DNA of 64,000 nt from positions 124,001 to 188,000 of the IMG/VR virus record IMGVR_UViG_3300030339_000003, one strand, 5' to 3'. Shown here piece after piece: positions 11,215 to 35,118 of the stretch (positions are counted from its first letter, which is position 1; each line of letters starts with the position of its first letter). The position numbers and the translations under genes are program-made. Under the pieces are notes generated by a model. It was not told the DNA's origin, searched no databases, and saw only the letters and a list, made by a program, of their open reading frames with translations.

Positions 11215-12198
11215 TTAGAAGCAGCTACCGTCTTCGTTAGCATCATCGCTGAAGTCGTCTTGCTTAACAAAAGTAGAACGAGAGTTCTGTGACGATTTTT
11301 CCAGTTCGTCCAGTTCATGTTTTACTTTTTCTACTGCTTCGCCGTGATCCAGGGTCAACACGATAGTACTGTCGGATGGTGGGTTGTTATCAAGGTTGAT
11401 AATACCCGTTGCACGATAACCTGCGCCTTCAAAAATGGTCTTCACGTTTTCACGGCTGTCATGCAGCGAGCAATACGCTACTGGCGGTTTGCCGGTAAAA
11501 TCGGCCAGATACTTTTCGTTGAAGAAATTGATTTCAGACAGCGCTGGCGGCAGGCCGGTAACTTTTGAGTATTGAAGCAAATTAACGATGTCTTCAAAGT
11601 CCAGACCTTCGTTTGATTCGGTCAGGAACAGAGAAAGGTAATTGATTTCGTTGACGGCTTCTTTGTTTACTTCGCCCCAGGTTTTATCAGACGTGTTGTT
11701 AACGCGAATGAACGGGATGACTTTGCCCAGGTAGCGTTGTTGAGTTTGGTTAGCGTAAGACTGCAACACTTTAACCGAGTTACGACGTTCTACCAGTGAG
11801 CTGAAATCAGATACCAGAACCAGAACAGCCGGAACACCTTTGCTGATCAGATAACGCATTGTTGCTAACGTCAGACCAGAACCAGAACCGCCCGCACCAG
11901 AACCAATGACAATAACAAATTTGCCAGGTTTATGTTTACGGAAAGTTTCGCCGATGAATGGAGACATATGCTCGTAGTTGAGCGTGATATCTTTACCACT
12001 ACCCTGCGCTTTTTCGCCAGGAGCGCGAGTTGAATTCATGTGTTCCAGTGGGAACATATTATCGGTCGGGTTGGAATCAGAAGTATCCAGTGCCAGATAA
12101 GATGCTTCTTTAATGATTTTAGTACCAGGCATAGCCAGCAGATCTTTACCAATGTTAATACCAGTACCGCCGCAAAGTACGATCTGTAATTCTGACAT
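11215..12198 (-). CDS. phuZ: PhuZ tubulin (phage spindle)
   Basis: GGTGINIG, GSGK and GSGAGGSGSG tubulin/FtsZ signature loops, GLDFED T7-loop-like segment, acidic C-tail, 327 aa. Confidence 0.93.
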   Translation of the reverse strand: MSELQIVLCGGTGINIGKDLLAMPGTKIIKEASYLALDTSDSNPTDNMFPLEHMNSTRAPGEKAQGSGKDITLNYEHMSPFIGETFRKHKPGKFVIVIGSGAGGSGSGLTLATMRYLISKGVPAVLVLVSDFSSLVERRNSVKVLQSYANQTQQRYLGKVIPFIRVNNTSDKTWGEVNKEAVNEINYLSLFLTESNEGLDFEDIVNLLQYSKVTGLPPALSEINFFNEKYLADFTGKPPVAYCSLHDSRENVKTIFEGAGYRATGIINLDNNPPSDSTIVLTLDHGEAVEKVKHELDELEKSSQNSRSTFVKQDDFSDDANEDGSCF

Positions 12199-12269: not shown

Positions 12270-12289
12270 TAAGTAATATAGGTCTGAAA
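12270..12289 (-). promoter_or_regulatory. early promoter (TATATTAC) for phuZ
   Basis: Minus strand TTTCAGACCTATATTACTTA. Confidence 0.8.
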
Positions 12290-12362: not shown

Positions 12363-13319
12363 ATCCCCAGAAGGTTCATTGTATTCGGAATCCTAGGATG
12401 GCGCAATGCCAATCAATATATTTCTTACGGCGTAGCGGCCGAGGATGCGCTGGTTTTAATACTTCCGAACTGGGGATGAGTTCATTGGAAGATTCGGTAT
12501 ATGTTAAACCTTTAATGGTAGCTACCACAAGATTAAACATCGTAAGTTGGGTTAGAAAGAATTTACCGGTTGAGGGTAAACGTAATATAAGAAACATTGT
12601 TACCCTCCATTTGGAATATCATTTAGAGTGAAGCATTGTGTACAAGTCAAGAGCATATCACATCGGAGGCTGCCCGATGTACGCTTCATTGGCTTACTGT
12701 TATAGCCCGTTAATCTTCCATAACGCGACGCGTCGCAACAAGAAGTTCTTTAACCGGCATGTGTGGCTCTTATTGGTACCGGATATACCGGCGGTGGTGT
12801 CCACGAGCTACCAACGTGTCTCGTCGGTGTGCTTACACAATACCCACTCTAAATGATACTAAAGCAGGTCAACTATCCTTGTTGACCTTTACTTTTATTA
12901 CAGGCTGTTTACGACAAGGCAAAAGAACGCTCACGCTGACAGGGATGAGGTTCGGTAAGTATTTGATTTACTTAACGAACATCACTTTACATAAAGGTTG
13001 ATATTGCAGTGAGAAATTATTAGTGTCTGCTAGGGGCATAGGGGTGAAAGTCCCGTTCCCATTTTCTATTCTTGTTGTTCCCACACAGACCGATGGGCAA
13101 GCAGTTTTCACTTCGGGAGAAGCAAACTTTTATCGTTGCAACGCGATAAATCTTTAATAAGGTGTAAGGTATTCAATAACTTTATCGAGTTTGGTTGTCA
13201 ATAGACGTTTCAATTAAAAACTGAGTTTCAGTTACTGGTACCTTACATAAAGAGTATTTGCAAAACAGATCGACGGTTAACAATGCGAGGTGACACCCTT
13301 AATGATCTGTTTCACAAAT
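12363..13319. ncRNA. putative large structured non-coding RNA or RNA cluster (unassigned)
   Basis: No convincing CDS; nested long-range helices, e.g. 12617-12630/12845-12858 (14 bp perfect), 12635-42/12834-41, 12363-70/12470-77, 13163-71/13239-47, 13263-71/13304-12. Confidence 0.6.
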
Positions 13320-13320
13320 T

Positions 13321-13430
13321 TGGTAGGAAGTGAAGGATTCGAACCTCCGCGCTGTCCAGTATAGCCGTGGCCATACCTTCAAGCGACAACACTTATTATG
13401 TTGGGGCTTCGGCCTCTCGCCCAACTTCCT
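13321..13430 (-). tRNA. atypical 110-nt tRNA-like RNA with very long variable arm (anticodon position ATA)
   Basis: Acceptor AGGAAGT/ACTTCCT-A-CCA, D arm GGC/GCC, CAACA-TAATAAG-TGTTG, 38-nt variable region, T arm GGAGG-TTCGAAT-CCTTC. Confidence 0.75.
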
Positions 13431-13434
13431 ATAA

Positions 13435-13521
13435 TAGTGACCAAGGTTGGAGTCGAACCAACGTACACACTTTGGTGTAACTCTATTTAAGAGTAAGATG
13501 AGCCGTTCTCTTTTCTTGATC
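13435..13521 (-). tRNA. degenerate tRNA-like RNA / pseudo-tRNA
   Basis: Acceptor GATCAAG/CTTGGTC, T arm GTTGG-TTCGACT-CCAAC, variable-arm hairpin TACAC/GTGTA, aberrant anticodon arm, ends A-CTA. Confidence 0.6.
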
Positions 13522-13531
13522 TGAATTAGTA

Positions 13532-13921
13532 TTATGACTCGACAAGTGAACTAATAAACAAAAGTTGTTTACCAATTAACTTCACTTCTGACCAGCCTTT
13601 TTCAATAGCAAGTTTAATAACCAAATTAATAAGTTCTGGTTTAATGGCTTCTTTGTTGCAGTCCATTAAAGGGGTTACATTTCCCAACTTATCATACACT
13701 GGCCAGTCTGGTTTATAATAAGACTTAATAAGTTTTAAAACACCATCGCTACTCATTAAATAAGTAGGATCGTTTTTAGTTCTTTCCCCAGCATCCGGCA
13801 AACTAACTATTTTTTGTTTAAAATAGTTAAATGGAGTGGGATCACCTGGACCCGCTAAATGTTCATTAACGCGTGGAGGTTCGGCTGGATAAGGCTGATT
13901 TAATATTAACTCGTCTTTCAT
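13532..13921 (-). CDS. hypothetical protein embedded in the tRNA/ncRNA island
   Basis: 129-aa ORF with GAGG RBS. Confidence 0.7.
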   Translation of the reverse strand: MKDELILNQPYPAEPPRVNEHLAGPGDPTPFNYFKQKIVSLPDAGERTKNDPTYLMSSDGVLKLIKSYYKPDWPVYDKLGNVTPLMDCNKEAIKPELINLVIKLAIEKGWSEVKLIGKQLLFISSLVES

Positions 13922-13992
13922 TTTTTACTTCCTCATGGATTGTGCATCAAAAACCAAAATGGTAGATGCGGATCTTCATGACTTTATGAAGT

Positions 13993-14077
13993 TGGTACGA
14001 GGGATGGGAATCGAACCCACATGATCGAAATCGAGGGATTTTAAATCCCTTGCGTCTACCTATTTCGCCACCCTCGC
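13993..14077 (-). tRNA. tRNA-Leu(UAA)
   Basis: Full cloverleaf GCGAGGG...AGGGA-TT TAA AA-TCCCT, type II variable arm, TTCGATT loop, A discriminator, encoded CCA. Confidence 0.96.
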
Positions 14078-14084
14078 GTTTATT

Positions 14085-14345
14085 AGACACCGGCTCGCTC
14101 TGTGATGAACTCACGTCACTTAAAATACTCCCTGCCGGAATGGGGAATCGCGTTGGTCACAGATATAGTCGCGTACTAAACCGTTCTCAACGTTCTTGTA
14201 TAAGGTGACGCCCCTACGAATCCCACGTAGCTTATAAGCGCCCATAAGTCAAAATCAACACTTCGCACAATGGCCTGGTTGGTTCCTACTCATTTAGGGC
14301 TTACGGTCGTCTTCTGGTTCCCAATGGAACACTGCGACAGGCATC
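14085..14345. ncRNA. putative structured RNA between tRNA-Leu and tRNA-Asn
   Basis: ORF-free, GC-richer than flanks, several stems (14099-105/14157-63, 14273-77/14338-42, 14317-21/14326-30). Confidence 0.4.
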
Positions 14346-14351
14346 ATAATT

Positions 14352-14427
14352 TGGCGACCCTAGCAGGACTCGAACCTGCGACATATGGATTAACAGTCCA
14401 CCGTTCTACCAACTGAACTATAAGGTC
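14352..14427 (-). tRNA. tRNA-Asn(GUU)
   Basis: 76-nt cloverleaf GACCTTA...GTGGA-CT GTT AA-TCCAT...TTCGAGT...G-CCA. Confidence 0.96.
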
Positions 14428-14434
14428 TTAATTC

Positions 14435-14797
14435 TTATTTCGGTTCTGTCTTACTATCCAGCTCTGGACGCTTTTGAGCTAAAACATAATATGCAAATGT
14501 GGATTTAACCCATCCGCCTTCACCGATTTCACGAACGTAGTAATCCAAGGTCGGATCTTCTGCTTCCGCTTTGTTTAATTCTGCAACCAGCTGATCATAA
14601 CCACCGATATGTTTATCATCGATATAGATCTGCGGGACTGTCGTTACTGGTTTGCCGGCAAGTAAAGATAATTCTTCTTTACCCATCTTAGCTTGAACGA
14701 TGTCAATATAATCGAATTCCATTGACAACTCTAGCATCAGAGCTTTGGCTTTGTCACAGTAAGGACAATTGGGTTTACCATAAATCACAACTTTCAT
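14435..14797 (-). CDS. glutaredoxin with C-terminal extension
   Basis: CPYC active site, TVPQIYIDDKHIGGY motif; start reassigned to MKVVIY. Confidence 0.92.
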   Translation of the reverse strand: MKVVIYGKPNCPYCDKAKALMLELSMEFDYIDIVQAKMGKEELSLLAGKPVTTVPQIYIDDKHIGGYDQLVAELNKAEAEDPTLDYYVREIGEGGWVKSTFAYYVLAQKRPELDSKTEPK

Positions 14798-14861
14798 GTT
14801 AAACTCTTTTTGTTGGTTACCACGGAGAAACATAATATATTTAACCATGGTAATAAATTAT

Positions 14862-31824: not shown

Positions 31825-34800
31825 TTATGCCGCTCTACGTTGTTTACCTAACCGCTGACTACGTTCAACCTTAGCTTGTTCAATGATACTGTCCACCGTT
31901 CTTACACGTTTATTATCCTTAGGCAACAAGCGCGTCAGCTTATTGATTTCGTATTCTAAACGAGAAGCAAGCAAGTTGTCATTTGTCTTCACGTATTCTT
32001 CAGTTAACTTAATAACACGTAAACGAATCGCATCAATGAATTCAATAACTTTAGGATTATCAAATACCGTTGTTGCGTTTTCTGCAACCAAGTTACGAGT
32101 ACGCGTCAATTCAATCCCAGAAGGAATACCAAAGATTGATTTGTTAACACGTTTAATAAACCAGAACGTTAACAGCCAACTAATGACTAAGTCATCGTGT
32201 CCATCAGTGTCATGGTCAATACGGTCGTGTTTGATTTTCAATGCAATAAGTTCATCAATTAACTTATCGTAGTGAATACCAGCACCCGTTACTCCTACAG
32301 CTTCTTTAACTAAACCATAAAGATCTTTACGTGTTTGAGCATTGGTAACAAAACCAAACATCTCTTTAAAGCGCAGATAAAACTCTTTAGTACGACTGCC
32401 TGGACGAACTCGTTTAACTTCTTCGAATTCTTTTGCATAACGGACTGGGTCATAATAAATGCGGTTAAACATTTTCTTAAACGGATCCATACCTCTGGAC
32501 CACATAGTCGTCAACAGGTTGTCAACCATATGGTGCGCATAGTTACGCTCAATAACCAAAATACTGTTATTGATAGAAGTCAGCAAGTCCATAATAATGC
32601 TTTCAACGTCATCCAAGAAGGCTAAAGGATAACGACCTACCGCAATGGTATCACCGGACACCATAGAACGCACCACAACGGTACAGGCATCTTTATTGAT
32701 CGCAGACGATGTATCACATCCAATTAAGAAGTAGTCGTTGTGTTCAGGCTTACAGGCTTCCATGAGTTGTTCTTTGGTAATAAAGAAATCCATGTACAAA
32801 TTGGAATCTTTATATTCCTTAGACCACAATGCATCGCTTTTGTTTTCACTGAGCTTTTCACGGGTTAAGTCATCGAACAGACGATCTTCACCGTCTTCCA
32901 CCCACATTAACAGCAAGTCAATCTTAGCCTTACTTAAAGACAAACCTAATTCGTTAATGATCTTAGCAACCCAGTTTTTATTCTTACCTAATTTCAGATA
33001 GTTATAAATCATGGATATGGAAGGAGATGCGGTGTTAATATCTTTCACACCCATTGGAGCACGCTTAATGACTTTGTAAACCAAATGAGATTCACTGTAA
33101 CAGTCAAAGAAAGTTTCACGCCATTCAGTTGCATCCATAACCTTTTTATACATATACGCACCGCTTGGATGCTTAATGGTATTTGGGGTTGTGATGTAGT
33201 TGATGCCGTAAGGTAATCCTTTCTTACGCATGTTCTCCATTTCAGTCAGTGCAGAAGGCGTACAACCATCGACGATAGCCATGATATAACTGATATAACC
33301 AGGTTCGTCAAAGTTAGTAGTACCAACGGTTAAACCACGACCCAAGTCACCCGCAGCGGCTTCTGATTGCTGTGGAACGGATATGGTTAATACGTTAGCT
33401 TTACCTTCACCAAAAGCTCGATAGGTTAAGTAAGTCCCTGAGTCTTTGTCTTTGTATGTGGTGTTAACCAAATACTTAGGCATTTGTGTGCGAATGTTTT
33501 TGATGGCTTCAATGAACTGTGCCCGGTTATCTGATTTCAGTGTAATCAGATGCGTCTTATAAGAACGCCCCATGATGTACGTTAACCAGAAGTCAATAAC
33601 TTGAACACTTACTGTGTTGTGTGTAACGATAAAGTCATCGGTCACATAAGTCGAGTCATCGTTATTTACTTCAATACAAACACATTCACGATCACCCGAA
33701 TATAATACCGACTCAACAAACAGTTTGTTAGGGTAAGCAGGAATATCCTTCACATCTTTAAAAGCAAAGTAAGGAATAGCTTCCGGTAAAGTAATAACGA
33801 GTTTATTAATCTTTTCAATAAACTTAGCGGTACCACCTAATGAACGTACCAAGTATTGAACTTGACGCATAAACGGAGTGTTCTTGGTTTTAACAATAAC
33901 ACCGTCAGTTCCTAACGCACCTTGCGCATCCAGAATACCGTGCAGTAATTCCATGCGCGTACTGATACTAGAATCCAGTAAGTTTAATGGAACGCCAACG
34001 TCATTGTTGATAACAAATGCACTGTTATCTTTCTTAACAATCCCTAATCCATTTGACATTACCACAACGTTATAAGTATCAGGAGAATCCCGGTCTAATA
34101 ACGCCTGTAAAGCTTCCAGAGACGATTCATTTACACCAGGCAAGCAAATACACACGGATTCATTTAAAGCGCCTGACAGAGCCCCAAACAAGTAAGCATT
34201 TTTATCGTTAACTTTATTAGTGTTATCGACATTTTGGATTAGCGGTATTTGGATTGGGTCTTTAGTGTAGTCTTCACGTTTAAGTAAATCCAGGAAATAA
34301 GCTGTTGTTGTTTCACTCCATGATTCAACACCACAATCTCGGTTAGTGCGATAACGCCACATATGTTCAGGACAAGCACGCGTCTTACGACCATCACTCA
34401 TCTTAACTTCATATGTACGTTTAAAGCCTTGATAATGTAAGCCGTTAATTAATGCTTCTTTACCGTGTGGATCGATAATCGTGTCACCTGTTTTAAGGTC
34501 ACCAATTTCTTTCCATATTGGGTCGTAAGGCTTTAAAGGTTTAACACGAACCTTGGCACGTTTATCTTGTGCTTTTCCTTGCTGACGAGGCATGATGTTG
34601 TACGTAGTAATGTGGTTTAAATAAGTCCAAATAAAAGACACATTACCGCGGTTAGCCATAAAGGGTTGGTCTTCTTTCAGATGAACCACTTCACGTAAAT
34701 GATACCAGAAGTTTTCACGGTTCTCTTTAGTAATCCAAATCTTTTGTTCGTTGGTTAAATTCGCTTCATCTCGAGGATTGACACCCATCAGCATTGGGTT

Positions 34801-35118
34801 ATTCAATTGCAAAATAAACGCGTAGTTTTTAATACCCTGTAAACGAAACAATTCCGCTGTACGTTTAAAGCTCATGTTCTTTGTGGTGATATCAGGCTGA
34901 GCTTGATAACGATAAAAGTCTTTTAAGAAACGTACCGTCTTAATACCACTTAAAGAATCTTCCCGGAAGTGCTGTAGAATTACCTCATCTTGGGACTTTT
35001 TGCTGGTATCGATTTCTTCCTTTAAGTCATCAACAAAGTATTTAGGCAGTTCTTCAATACCTAAGAAGCGTTGCAAATCCTTAGCAACTTTAAGTTCATC
35101 AAGTAGTGCTGGTTCCAT
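31825..35118 (-). CDS. terL: terminase large subunit with intein (phiKZ gp25-like)
   Basis: Walker A PRQQGK/T split by intein, GRGLT..FDE Walker B, ITTP motif, nuclease IGCDTS and HDD motifs. Confidence 0.92.
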   Translation of the reverse strand: MEPALLDELKVAKDLQRFLGIEELPKYFVDDLKEEIDTSKKSQDEVILQHFREDSLSGIKTVRFLKDFYRYQAQPDITTKNMSFKRTAELFRLQGIKNYAFILQLNNPMLMGVNPRDEANLTNEQKIWITKENRENFWYHLREVVHLKEDQPFMANRGNVSFIWTYLNHITTYNIMPRQQGKAQDKRAKVRVKPLKPYDPIWKEIGDLKTGDTIIDPHGKEALINGLHYQGFKRTYEVKMSDGRKTRACPEHMWRYRTNRDCGVESWSETTTAYFLDLLKREDYTKDPIQIPLIQNVDNTNKVNDKNAYLFGALSGALNESVCICLPGVNESSLEALQALLDRDSPDTYNVVVMSNGLGIVKKDNSAFVINNDVGVPLNLLDSSISTRMELLHGILDAQGALGTDGVIVKTKNTPFMRQVQYLVRSLGGTAKFIEKINKLVITLPEAIPYFAFKDVKDIPAYPNKLFVESVLYSGDRECVCIEVNNDDSTYVTDDFIVTHNTVSVQVIDFWLTYIMGRSYKTHLITLKSDNRAQFIEAIKNIRTQMPKYLVNTTYKDKDSGTYLTYRAFGEGKANVLTISVPQQSEAAAGDLGRGLTVGTTNFDEPGYISYIMAIVDGCTPSALTEMENMRKKGLPYGINYITTPNTIKHPSGAYMYKKVMDATEWRETFFDCYSESHLVYKVIKRAPMGVKDINTASPSISMIYNYLKLGKNKNWVAKIINELGLSLSKAKIDLLLMWVEDGEDRLFDDLTREKLSENKSDALWSKEYKDSNLYMDFFITKEQLMEACKPEHNDYFLIGCDTSSAINKDACTVVVRSMVSGDTIAVGRYPLAFLDDVESIIMDLLTSINNSILVIERNYAHHMVDNLLTTMWSRGMDPFKKMFNRIYYDPVRYAKEFEEVKRVRPGSRTKEFYLRFKEMFGFVTNAQTRKDLYGLVKEAVGVTGAGIHYDKLIDELIALKIKHDRIDHDTDGHDDLVISWLLTFWFIKRVNKSIFGIPSGIELTRTRNLVAENATTVFDNPKVIEFIDAIRLRVIKLTEEYVKTNDNLLASRLEYEINKLTRLLPKDNKRVRTVDSIIEQAKVERSQRLGKQRRAA
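33616..34572 (-). mobile_element. class-3-type intein (319 aa) with degenerate LAGLIDADG domain
   Basis: Starts Ala (AQDK), block B ACPEHMW, block F ECVCIEV, block G IVTHN/T; AYLFGAL and LLHGILDAQG motifs. Confidence 0.88.

What the first reader, a model, noticed from the sequence alone, without database searches (positions are those of the whole stretch)
13435..13521. Second aberrant tRNA-like RNA in tandem
Only 4 nt from the 110-nt RNA. It has a perfect T arm, paired acceptor, D-like stem AAGA/TCTT and variable hairpin, but a collapsed anticodon arm (ACTCT-TAAAT-AGAGT), A at position 8 and a CTA end. Two neighbours both altered at the anticodon loop suggest elbow-preserving mimics or RNase P/Z processing signals rather than chance decay.
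Basis: partly seen in the sequence, partly recalled or inferred. Interest (0 to 1): 0.6.

Follow-up and report, generated by a model that had tools for sequence, protein, structure and literature searches.

The report
Non-decoding tRNA-like gene in jumbo phage
A jumbo phage from peat carries, at the end of its small tRNA gene cluster, an 87-base gene that folds like a tRNA but has no working anticodon loop. This resembles the two small RNAs of unknown function in phage T4's tRNA cluster, and whether it does anything is still unproven.

Summary
On the minus strand, 13521 to 13435 folds into a cloverleaf with a 7-bp acceptor stem, a perfect T arm, a variable hairpin, GG in the D loop and an anticodon arm collapsed to 5 bp plus the pentaloop UAAAU. 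Position 8 is A, the 3' end is CTA, and the 110-nt neighbour starts 4 nt further on. This is not chance. In the whole 231-kb phage only four sites combine a T arm with a fully paired acceptor stem: two real tRNAs and these two elements, all within 1.1 kb on one strand. Rfam's tRNA model scores it 23.5 bits, below the cut-off of 29. The host genome is a PhuZ-encoding (chimallivirus-like) jumbo phage from peat metagenomes. A related phage variant carries the element 87/87 identical while the adjacent gene differs at 10.5% of bases. A closer relative lacks the whole block. Block boundaries fall exactly at the 3' ends of the tRNA-like genes. I found no normal tRNA orthologue, no divergent copy and no RNA data. 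My best reading is a tRNA-derived, non-decoding RNA kept for its shape, cut out of the operon transcript like a tRNA. The closest parallel is T4 RNA C and RNA D. A well-preserved pseudogene remains a serious rival. Interest is moderate to low.

The parts
13435..13521 (-). The 87-nt tRNA-like element (the finding), here called el87. Sub-parts in window coordinates: acceptor 5' strand 13515-13521; A8 A9 13513-13514; D arm 13495-13512; collapsed anticodon arm 13480-13494 (pentaloop TAAAT 13485-13489); variable hairpin 13463-13479; T arm 13446-13462; acceptor 3' strand 13439-13445; discriminator A 13438; CTA 13435-13437.
   Evidence: Sequence. RNAfold cloverleaf. cmscan tRNA 23.5 bits. Genome-wide T-arm and acceptor scan. 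87/87 identity in L012, L013 and L014.
13431..13434 (-). 4-nt spacer (TTAT on the minus strand) between the two tRNA-like elements.
   Evidence: Sequence.
13321..13430 (-). The 110-nt tRNA-like neighbour, here called el110. It derives from tRNA-Ser(GCT). It has a 6-bp anticodon stem with pentaloop AAUAA, a 38-nt variable arm, A73 and an encoded CCA.
   Evidence: Fold. Alignment to tRNA-Ser(GCT) of relatives, z 6.2-6.9, with compensatory pairs 3-70 and 4-69. Absent from L012 and L002.
13532..13921 (-). ORF129, a gene of unknown function with a strong ribosome-binding site. Its stop codon lies 10 nt upstream of the element. It is gained and lost together with the element.
   Evidence: ORF list. 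Eleven homologues with invariant motifs. Homologues lie directly after tRNA genes in L015-L017. No Pfam family.
13993..14077 (-). tRNA-Leu(TAA), a genuine tRNA with encoded CCA. The ORF129 and el87 block begins immediately after its CCA.
   Evidence: ARAGORN and Rfam, 57.1 bits. Compensatory acceptor changes in L012.
14352..14427 (-). tRNA-Asn(GTT), a genuine tRNA and the first gene of the cluster.
   Evidence: ARAGORN and Rfam, 73.8 bits.
13256..13319 (-). Conserved 16-bp hairpin that always directly follows the last tRNA or tRNA-like gene: el110 in the window, el87 in L012 and tRNA-Leu in L002.
   Evidence: Fold. Inverted repeat I3. Alignments in which wobble pairs change to Watson-Crick pairs.

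Best explanation
The element is a tRNA-derived gene that no longer decodes but is kept as a folded RNA module in the phage's small tRNA operon.

The gene order on the minus strand is tRNA-Asn, tRNA-Leu, ORF129, el87, el110, hairpin.

Shown here:
- It has the acceptor/T-arm minihelix and a D loop with GG, the parts that tRNA-processing enzymes read.
- Its anticodon arm is a closed 5-bp stem with a 5-nt loop, and it lacks U8 and A14. It therefore cannot present an anticodon in the normal way.
- It is invariant between two phage variants.
- It is gained and lost as a block with ORF129, with block boundaries at tRNA 3' ends.

Inferred, not shown:
- The cluster is transcribed as one precursor.
- Host RNase P cuts at the 5' side of each cloverleaf. 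This would free the ORF129 message 10 nt after its stop codon and separate el87 from el110.
- 3' trimming removes the CUA and UUAU tail, possibly followed by CCA addition.
- The product is a stable RNA of about 84 nt.

Its role would then be transcript punctuation and 3'-end definition, with any trans-acting function on top of that. This is the same layout as phage T4: segB, tRNA-Arg, RNA D, RNA C.
For: - Cloverleaf minimum-energy fold with about 25 intact pairs.
- Perfect T loop TTCGACT and a 7/7 acceptor stem, one of only four such sites in 231 kb, all clustered and on the same strand.
- tRNA-model score of 23.5 bits, carried by the acceptor and T arms, with the anticodon arm deleted in the alignment.
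- 87/87 identity in L012-L014. By comparison ORF129 DNA is 89.5% identical, tRNA-Leu 90.6% and the 261 nt upstream about 94.6%. From those rates, the chance of no change in 87 nt is about 0.001-0.008.
- A 151-nt wetland contig (run X12) matches 13435-13527 with one difference and does not align on either side.
- Three independent block junctions fall exactly at tRNA or tRNA-like 3' ends in front of the same hairpin.
- The neighbour el110 shows compensatory divergence from tRNA-Ser(GCT) and the same kind of pentaloop.
- T4 has the same gene order with 1-nt and 6-nt spacers, and its RNA C has a canonical T arm.
- T4 RNA C and RNA D are expressed RNAs of unknown role (PMC3014915; PMC9697503).
- No ORF of 50 aa or more overlaps the element.
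Against: - No covariation is available, because all copies are identical.
- There is no transcript, end-mapping or CCA evidence. Only DNA runs hold the sequence.
- The close relative L002 (PhuZ 99% identical) lacks ORF129, el87 and el110, so the element is dispensable.
- With U8, A14 and nucleotide 26 missing, and with a D arm that is unpaired in the centroid structure, the L-shape itself is uncertain.
- The flanking 71-nt spacer is also nearly invariant (70/71), so the 87/87 identity may partly reflect a recently shared recombination tract.
- Relatives show plain tRNA decay at this locus.
Confidence: 0.42

Rival explanations
1. It is a tRNA pseudogene. A former type-II tRNA (long variable arm, A73) was inactivated by small deletions in the anticodon arm. 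It is now drifting without function and persists only because it is young or hitch-hikes with ORF129.
For: - The score is below the Rfam cut-off and default ARAGORN does not call it.
- The anticodon arm is 3 nt short, U8, A14 and C75 are altered, and it is the only one of the four genes without an encoded CCA.
- Relatives show clear tRNA decay at the same locus: tRNA-Leu broken by an HNH-type ORF in L003, a tRNA-Trp-like gene with a 6-nt loop in L015, and a tRNA 3' fragment in L002 and L012.
- The element is absent from L002.
Against: - No stem pair is broken, although at least three normally invariant unpaired positions have changed. If paired sites had drifted at a similar rate, several mismatches would be expected (my own rough estimate, about 1e-4).
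- There are no differences in 87 nt against a variant with 5-10% local divergence.
- No normal orthologue was found in any collection.
Confidence: 0.3
2. It is a trans-acting tRNA mimic. The processed RNA would bind or titrate a host factor that recognises the acceptor/T-arm or elbow of tRNA. Candidates are a tRNA-targeting defence nuclease, a processing or modification enzyme, or a factor linked to the phage nucleus. The dead anticodon arm would keep it out of translation.
For: - It shares all the structural evidence of the best explanation.
- Two unrelated tRNA-derived elements (el87 against el110, alignment z 1.0) both ended up with closed A/U pentaloops.
- The element appears in a third sequence context in the wetland contig.
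- Homologous loci in relatives carry accessory and anti-defence genes, for example a Tad2-like gene in L016 and L017.
Against: - There is no partner protein. ORF129 has no recognisable family and its predicted model is poor, with pLDDT 53.
- The genome has no Ro/TROVE protein and no CCA-adding enzyme.
- A decoy for an anticodon nuclease would be expected to keep the anticodon loop.
- The idea is purely inferential.
Confidence: 0.15
3. It is a working but unusual decoder. One version is the ARAGORN reading, tRNA(AAA) with the 7-nt loop UUAAAUA, perhaps charged through type-II and A73 identity. Another is a frameshift or suppressor tRNA.
For: ARAGORN at -ps80 draws a 7-nt loop with U33 and anticodon AAA.
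Against: - That fold needs a T.T mismatch in the anticodon stem and a D stem made of G.U, A.C and G.U.
- Position 37 would be U, and U8 and A14 are missing.
- A34 is not used for Phe in bacteria (established knowledge).
- The -ps80 setting gives about 0.5 false calls per kb.
- The energetically preferred fold closes the loop to 5 nt.
- ORFs read normally in table 11, so nothing suggests recoding.
Confidence: 0.03
4. It acts only as DNA, as a recombination or homing landmark. The T-arm and the CCA/CTA-AATTTG junction would serve as microhomology for exchanging gene cassettes between co-infecting phages, with no role for the RNA.
For: - Three block junctions lie exactly at tRNA-like 3' ends.
- tRNA-Leu and el110 share TACCAA at the junction that would produce the L002 arrangement.
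- HNH-type genes are active at this locus in relatives.
- T4 has the homing endonuclease gene segB inside its tRNA cluster.
Against: - A DNA landmark does not need five perfectly paired helices or a perfect T loop.
- The junction between el87 and the hairpin has almost no microhomology.
Confidence: 0.07

Closest known systems
Phage T4 small stable RNAs RNA C (species 1, 139 nt) and RNA D (species 2, 119 nt)
   Same: - Two tandem small RNA genes lie at the distal end of a phage tRNA cluster, separated by 1-6 nt and preceded by an ORF embedded in the cluster.
- RNA C has a canonical T arm and a terminal stem resembling an acceptor stem.
- They are expressed, and their function is still unknown (PMC3014915; PMC9697503).
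- From my own recollection of the 1970s literature, not checked here: species 1 RNA matures through RNase P and has a CCA end.
   Different: - There is no sequence similarity (el87 against RNA C, z 1.0).
- el87 is far closer to a tRNA: a full five-arm cloverleaf of 87 nt scoring 23.5 bits. RNA C matches only the tRNA-Sec model, at 17.5 bits.
- RNA D shows no tRNA features.
- The phage families differ (Straboviridae against a PhuZ-encoding jumbo phage).
Canonical bacterial or phage type-II tRNA (Leu, Ser, Tyr)
   Same: 7-bp acceptor stem, T arm with TTCGA, G18 G19 and A21 in the D loop, a long variable hairpin, A73, and a position in a tRNA cluster on the same strand.
   Different: - The anticodon arm is 15 nt where a tRNA has 17 plus nucleotide 26, and it closes to a pentaloop.
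- Positions 8 and 14 are A and G where a tRNA has U8 and A14.
- The D stem is almost entirely A-U.
- The 3' end is CTA where the neighbouring genes have CCA.
- The score is below the Rfam cut-off.
Pseudo-tRNAs and tRNA-like regulators, for example Bacillus cereus tRNA-Other (PMC3399842, listed)
   Same: A tRNA-shaped gene that is predicted not to function in translation yet may have a cellular role.
   Different: That one is chromosomal, and its role was shown by deletion. I found no homology to it, and no functional data exist here. I read only that paper's abstract.
Bacterial Y RNA-like YrlA, and the tRNA-like domain of tmRNA
   Same: Non-decoding RNAs that mimic the acceptor, T-arm and D-loop part of a tRNA.
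   Different: - There is no Ro/TROVE gene in the genome and no YrlA or tmRNA hit on the element.
- There is no Ro-binding stem and no G3-U70 pair.
- The ends of el87 form a plain acceptor stem.

Membership tests
tRNA (Rfam RF00005) | Score at or above the curated gathering threshold of 29 bits | tested here: not met
   23.5 bits. The alignment deletes the anticodon arm. There is no match at gathering thresholds.
tRNA (Rfam RF00005) | 7-bp acceptor stem and a 5-bp T stem with a T-loop of the TTCRANY type | tested here: met
   GATCAAG/CTTGGTC and GTTGG-TTCGACT-CCAAC.
tRNA (Rfam RF00005) | 5-bp anticodon stem with a 7-nt loop, U33 and a purine at position 37 | tested here: not met
   The preferred fold is 5 bp plus the 5-nt loop UAAAU. 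The only 7-nt alternative has U37, a T.T mismatch and a ruined D stem.
tRNA (Rfam RF00005) | Core tertiary nucleotides U8 and A14 (G18, G19 and A21 are also expected) | tested here: not met
   Positions 8 and 14 are A and G. G18, G19 and A21 are present.
tRNA pseudogene (decayed copy of a working tRNA) | Orthologues or paralogues that are normal tRNAs | tested here: not met
   - No related tRNA in 17 syntenic or homologous loci.
- None in the phage collection.
- None by IMG/VR patterns.
- JGI metagenomes gave only the same phage.
- These pattern searches see only near-identical copies.
tRNA pseudogene (decayed copy of a working tRNA) | Uncompensated mutations in the stems | tested here: not met
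   All acceptor, anticodon, variable and T pairs are intact, with one G-U pair.
T4-type small stable RNAs of a tRNA cluster (RNA C and RNA D) | Position at the distal end of a phage tRNA cluster, in tandem, on the same strand, a few nt apart | tested here: met
   Window order compared with the T4 annotation.
T4-type small stable RNAs of a tRNA cluster (RNA C and RNA D) | Sequence homology to T4 rnaC or rnaD | tested here: not met
   Global alignment z 1.0. No hit in the phage collection.
T4-type small stable RNAs of a tRNA cluster (RNA C and RNA D) | Accumulates as a discrete stable RNA during infection | not testable with these tools
   Only DNA metagenome runs hold the sequence.
Y RNA-like (YrlA) with Ro/Rsr | A Ro/TROVE protein partner and a match to the YrlA model | tested here: not met
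   PF05731 is absent from the genome. No YrlA hit on the element.
tmRNA tRNA-like domain | tmRNA detection and the G3-U70 alanine identity pair | tested here: not met
   ARAGORN with -m found no tmRNA. Pair 3-70 is U-G, not G-U.

The most novel reading that the evidence does not exclude
el87, with el110, would represent a class of self-contained tRNA-derived modules in nucleus-forming jumbo phages. In these modules the anticodon loop has been deliberately closed to an A/U pentaloop while the acceptor/T-arm and elbow are kept. They would move as cassettes that insert exactly at tRNA 3' ends. The processed RNAs would act in trans as tRNA mimics, for example by titrating a host tRNA-directed defence or processing factor. 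That would also give a testable function for the long-unexplained T4 RNA C and RNA D type of gene.
Probability: 0.12. Interest if true: 0.75.

Novelty: new member of a known kind. Interest (0 to 1): 0.35.

Why it matters
Phage tRNA clusters often contain tRNA-shaped genes that annotation tools drop or label as pseudogenes. The two T4 examples have had no assigned function for fifty years. This element is a clean case. Every helix is intact, the decoding part is gone, it is invariant between variants, and it sits on a small gene block that is present or absent among very close relatives. If it is expressed and processed, it would show that such elements are kept for their shape, either as processing punctuation or as mimics. 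It would also offer a natural presence/absence series for testing that idea: the window, L012 and L002. If it is not expressed, it is an ordinary young pseudogene.

Tried and rejected
**Searches for homologues, all empty or uninformative**
- blastn of the region and of the element alone against 50,697 phage records gave only generic T-arm matches of 25-33 nt.
- Five exact or gapped patterns were run in IMG/VR. Three el87 patterns gave nothing. A T-arm and acceptor pattern found unrelated tRNA-Arg(CCT) genes and two chance hits. An el110 pattern gave chance hits only.
- The single JGI metagenome scan returned two contigs of the same phage.
- The search for related loci with PhuZ in IMG/VR found nothing.
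- The genome search does not draw relatives for a virus record.

**Expression**
- No RNA run holds the sequence. They showed no joints.

**ORF129**
- There is no Pfam family. The PHROG matches are partial and of unknown function.
- The AlphaFold model from 11 sequences has pLDDT 53, so I did not run a fold search.

**Other checks**
- The sigma-70 promoter and terminator scan shows nothing at the cluster, and it is not appropriate for phages with their own RNA polymerases.
- The motif GGKGYCACCT is not enriched.
- The ARAGORN intron mode reading of el110 as tRNA-Ser(ACT) with a 10-nt intron is rejected as an artefact of relaxed search.
- The T4 genome review (PMC150520) is not held.

**Limits and rules**
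- No alternative genetic code was used.
- The large representative protein search and the complex prediction were not needed.

Full report
**Setting**

The window is bases 124001-188000 of a 231,366-bp IMG/VR virus record with direct terminal repeats. It encodes a PhuZ tubulin (11215-12198, minus strand; PHROG E 2.5e-67), a tail sheath protein and a large terminase. The nearest isolates share only about 39% PhuZ identity: Erwinia phages RisingSun and Joad, Shewanella phage FishSpeaker and Pseudomonas phage EL. This is therefore an uncultured, chimallivirus-like jumbo phage. Public runs that hold the sequence are peat and wetland metagenomes, all DNA.

Genes around the finding are all on the minus strand, in this order:

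| Feature | Coordinates |
|---|---|
| glutaredoxin-like gene | 14435-14848 |
| tRNA-Asn(GTT) | 14352-14427 |
| tRNA-Leu(TAA) | 13993-14077 |
| ORF129 | 13532-13921 |
| the 87-nt element (el87) | 13435-13521 |
| the 110-nt element (el110) | 13321-13430 |
| a 16-bp hairpin | 13256-13319 |
| about 650 nt without a long ORF | |
| a 73-codon ORF | 12376-12597 |
| PhuZ | 11215-12198 |

- a 7-bp acceptor stem with one G-U pair;
- A8 and A9;
- the D stem AAGA/TCTT around a 10-nt loop with GG;
- the anticodon arm ACTCT-TAAAT-AGAGT;
- a variable hairpin;
- a perfect T arm;
- discriminator A, followed by CTA;
- 4 nt (TTAT) before el110.

RNAfold returns the cloverleaf as its minimum-energy structure (z -2.3). 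The D arm is its weakest part. Rfam's tRNA model matches the element end to end at 23.5 bits, below the cut-off of 29, with the anticodon arm treated as a deletion. Default ARAGORN does not call it. At -ps80 ARAGORN proposes tRNA-Phe(AAA) with a 7-nt loop, but only by accepting a T.T mismatch and an almost unpaired D stem. That setting also produces about one false call per 2 kb.

Chance is excluded by a genome-wide scan. Ten sites in 231 kb (both strands) have a paired 5-bp stem around a TTCRANY loop. Only four of these also have a 7/7 acceptor stem at tRNA distance. They are the two tRNAs and the two tRNA-like elements, all within 1.1 kb on one strand. No ORF of 50 codons or more overlaps the element.

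**Relatives**

PhuZ homologues led to syntenic contigs, and ORF129 homologues led to more. Three arrangements exist among very close relatives:
- In L002 (PhuZ 99% identical), tRNA-Leu is followed directly by the hairpin sequence AATTTGTGAAACAGATC.
- In L012, L013 and L014 (ORF129 88% identical at the protein level), tRNA-Leu is followed by ORF129 and el87, and then the same hairpin. There is no el110.
- In the window, el110 is present as well.

Every junction therefore lies exactly behind the CCA or CTA of a tRNA or tRNA-like gene and in front of the same hairpin. tRNA-Leu and el110 share TACCAA at the junction, so deletion through microhomology is as plausible as insertion.

The el87 copy in L012-L014 is 87/87 identical. 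Over the same alignment:
- ORF129 DNA is 89.5% identical.
- tRNA-Leu is 90.6% identical, with compensatory acceptor-stem changes.
- The 261 nt upstream of el87 are about 94.6% identical.

At those rates the chance of no change in 87 nt is roughly 0.001-0.008. This is my calculation from the positions printed in that call. The caveat is that the 71-nt spacer before ORF129 is also 70/71 identical.

A 151-nt wetland contig (run X12) matches 13435-13527 with one difference and does not align on either side. I could not read its flanks.

More distant relatives carry ORF129 homologues directly after tRNA genes but have no el87. No other copy or normal-tRNA orthologue turned up in the phage collection, IMG/VR or JGI metagenomes. 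By global alignment el87 is no closer to any tRNA of the set than tRNAs generally are to one another (z at most 3.6). It is not a paralogue of el110 (z 1.0).

**The neighbour**

el110 is specifically related to the tRNA-Ser(GCT) that relatives carry next to tRNA-Asn (z 6.2-6.9). Acceptor pairs 3-70 and 4-69 have changed on both sides. Its variable arm has grown from 18 to 38 nt with perfect pairing. Its anticodon arm is replaced by a 6-bp stem with the pentaloop AAUAA. That is divergence under structural constraint, not decay. It makes the parallel state of el87 (pentaloop UAAAU) less likely to be an accident.

**Evidence for decay at this locus**

- In L003, tRNA-Leu is interrupted by an 870-bp insert that carries a weakly HNH-like ORF, with loss of 18 nt of the tRNA.
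- L015 has a tRNA-Trp-like gene with a 6-nt loop.
- L002 and L012 hold a tRNA 3' fragment scoring 21.4 bits.
- L002 shows that the phage can do without the ORF129, el87 and el110 block.

**Interpretation**

Decoding is very unlikely. The arm is 3 nt short, the stable fold closes the loop to five bases, U8 and A14 are absent, and the only 7-nt reading gives an AAA anticodon with U37.

Against plain decay, about 25 stem pairs are intact while at least three normally invariant single-stranded positions (8, 14, 75) differ from the tRNA norm. Had paired sites drifted at a comparable rate, several broken pairs would be expected. This is a rough estimate of my own and assumes a canonical ancestor.

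I therefore favour a tRNA-derived RNA kept for its fold. The mechanism I commit to is inferred from how bacterial and T4 tRNA precursors are matured (established knowledge):
1. The cluster is transcribed as one precursor.
2. RNase P cuts 5' of each cloverleaf. This ends the ORF129 message 10 nt after its stop codon and separates el87 from el110.
3. The 3' tail CUA-UUAU is trimmed.

Nothing in this chain has been observed here.

**Comparison with what is known**

The closest analogue is phage T4. Its annotation shows segB, tRNA-Arg, rnaD (119 nt) and rnaC (139 nt), with 1-nt and 6-nt spacers. rnaC carries a canonical T arm and weakly matches the tRNA-Sec model at 17.5 bits. Reviews still list both RNAs as being of unknown role (PMC3014915; PMC9697503). 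There is no sequence homology to el87, so the resemblance is one of layout and kind, not of family.

Y RNA-like and tmRNA-like readings fail. The genome has no TROVE gene and no CCA-adding enzyme, there are no model hits, and pair 3-70 is U-G.

**Verdict**

I class it as a new, lineage-restricted member of the known kind 'non-decoding tRNA-like genes in phage tRNA clusters'. My confidence in the favoured explanation is about 0.42, against about 0.30 for the pseudogene. Interest is 0.35.

Noticed in passing
window 12615-12860 (minus strand): A multi-branched RNA candidate of about 245 nt, closed by a stem of about 27 bp that includes a perfect 14-nt inverted repeat (12617-12630 / 12845-12858). 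Minimum free energy is -93.8 kcal/mol, z -5.97, and 0 of 200 shuffles fold as well. It has no Rfam match. It is 92-94% conserved in L002 and L012, with a few pairs changed on both sides. It lies just upstream of the 73-codon ORF and PhuZ.
   Followed up: partly
window 13321-13430 (minus strand): The 110-nt neighbour derives from tRNA-Ser(GCT), which relatives carry next to tRNA-Asn. It has compensatory acceptor changes, a 38-nt perfectly paired variable arm, the pentaloop AAUAA in place of the anticodon loop, A73 instead of G73, and an encoded CCA. It is absent from L012 and L002.
   Followed up: partly
window 13256-13319 (minus strand); L012:1176-1240; L002:4620-4684: A 16-bp hairpin always directly follows the last tRNA or tRNA-like gene, whichever that is. 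Differences between the genomes turn wobble pairs into Watson-Crick pairs. No T-run follows it, so it may be a processing site or a phage-specific terminator.
   Followed up: partly
L003:1799-2744: In a relative with 71% PhuZ identity, tRNA-Leu(TAA) is split by about 870 bp that carry a 243-aa ORF with a weak HNH_3 match. Eighteen nt of the tRNA (3' side of the D stem through the anticodon) are lost. A TATATTAC motif sits just upstream of the inserted ORF.
   Followed up: partly
L015:214-288: A tRNA-Trp-like gene has the 6-nt loop CACAAA where its L016 counterpart has CTCCAAA, and it lacks an encoded CCA. This is another tRNA with an altered anticodon loop, directly upstream of an ORF129 homologue.
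   Followed up: no
L012:1742-1850 and L002:4951-5060: A tRNA 3' fragment (T arm plus acceptor 3' strand, 21.4 bits) is followed about 15 nt later by a stretch that looks like a tRNA 5' half with a D arm (TAGCTCATAGCGGTCTAGAGCA). This is either rearranged tRNA debris or a permuted arrangement. The window has no counterpart.
   Followed up: no
window, whole (for example 12273-12280 and 12582-12589, minus strand): TATATTAC occurs 11 times against 3.4 expected, and 0 of 100 shuffles reach 11. Nine copies are on the minus (coding) strand, including one upstream of PhuZ. None lies in the tRNA cluster at 13300-14450. I recall this as the early-promoter motif of phiKZ-type phages but did not check that here.
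   Followed up: no
window 13532-13921 (minus strand); L015, L016, L017: ORF129 belongs to a small family with no annotated function and with invariant motifs (PD.GERT.NDP.YLMSS..LKLIK and GW.EVKLIGKQL.F). Its members always lie directly downstream of tRNA genes and near a glutaredoxin gene. A Tad2-like gene is nearby in L016 and L017.
   Followed up: partly
window 14078-14351 (minus strand): The 274-nt spacer between tRNA-Asn and tRNA-Leu has no ORF yet is 96% conserved in L012 and 93% in L002. It may hold another RNA or a regulatory region.
   Followed up: no
window 31825-35118 (minus strand): The 1097-aa ORF has large-terminase matches at residues 34-182 and 197-418, plus weak primase and helicase-loader matches. 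It is much longer than usual terminases, so it may carry an inserted or fused domain.
   Followed up: no
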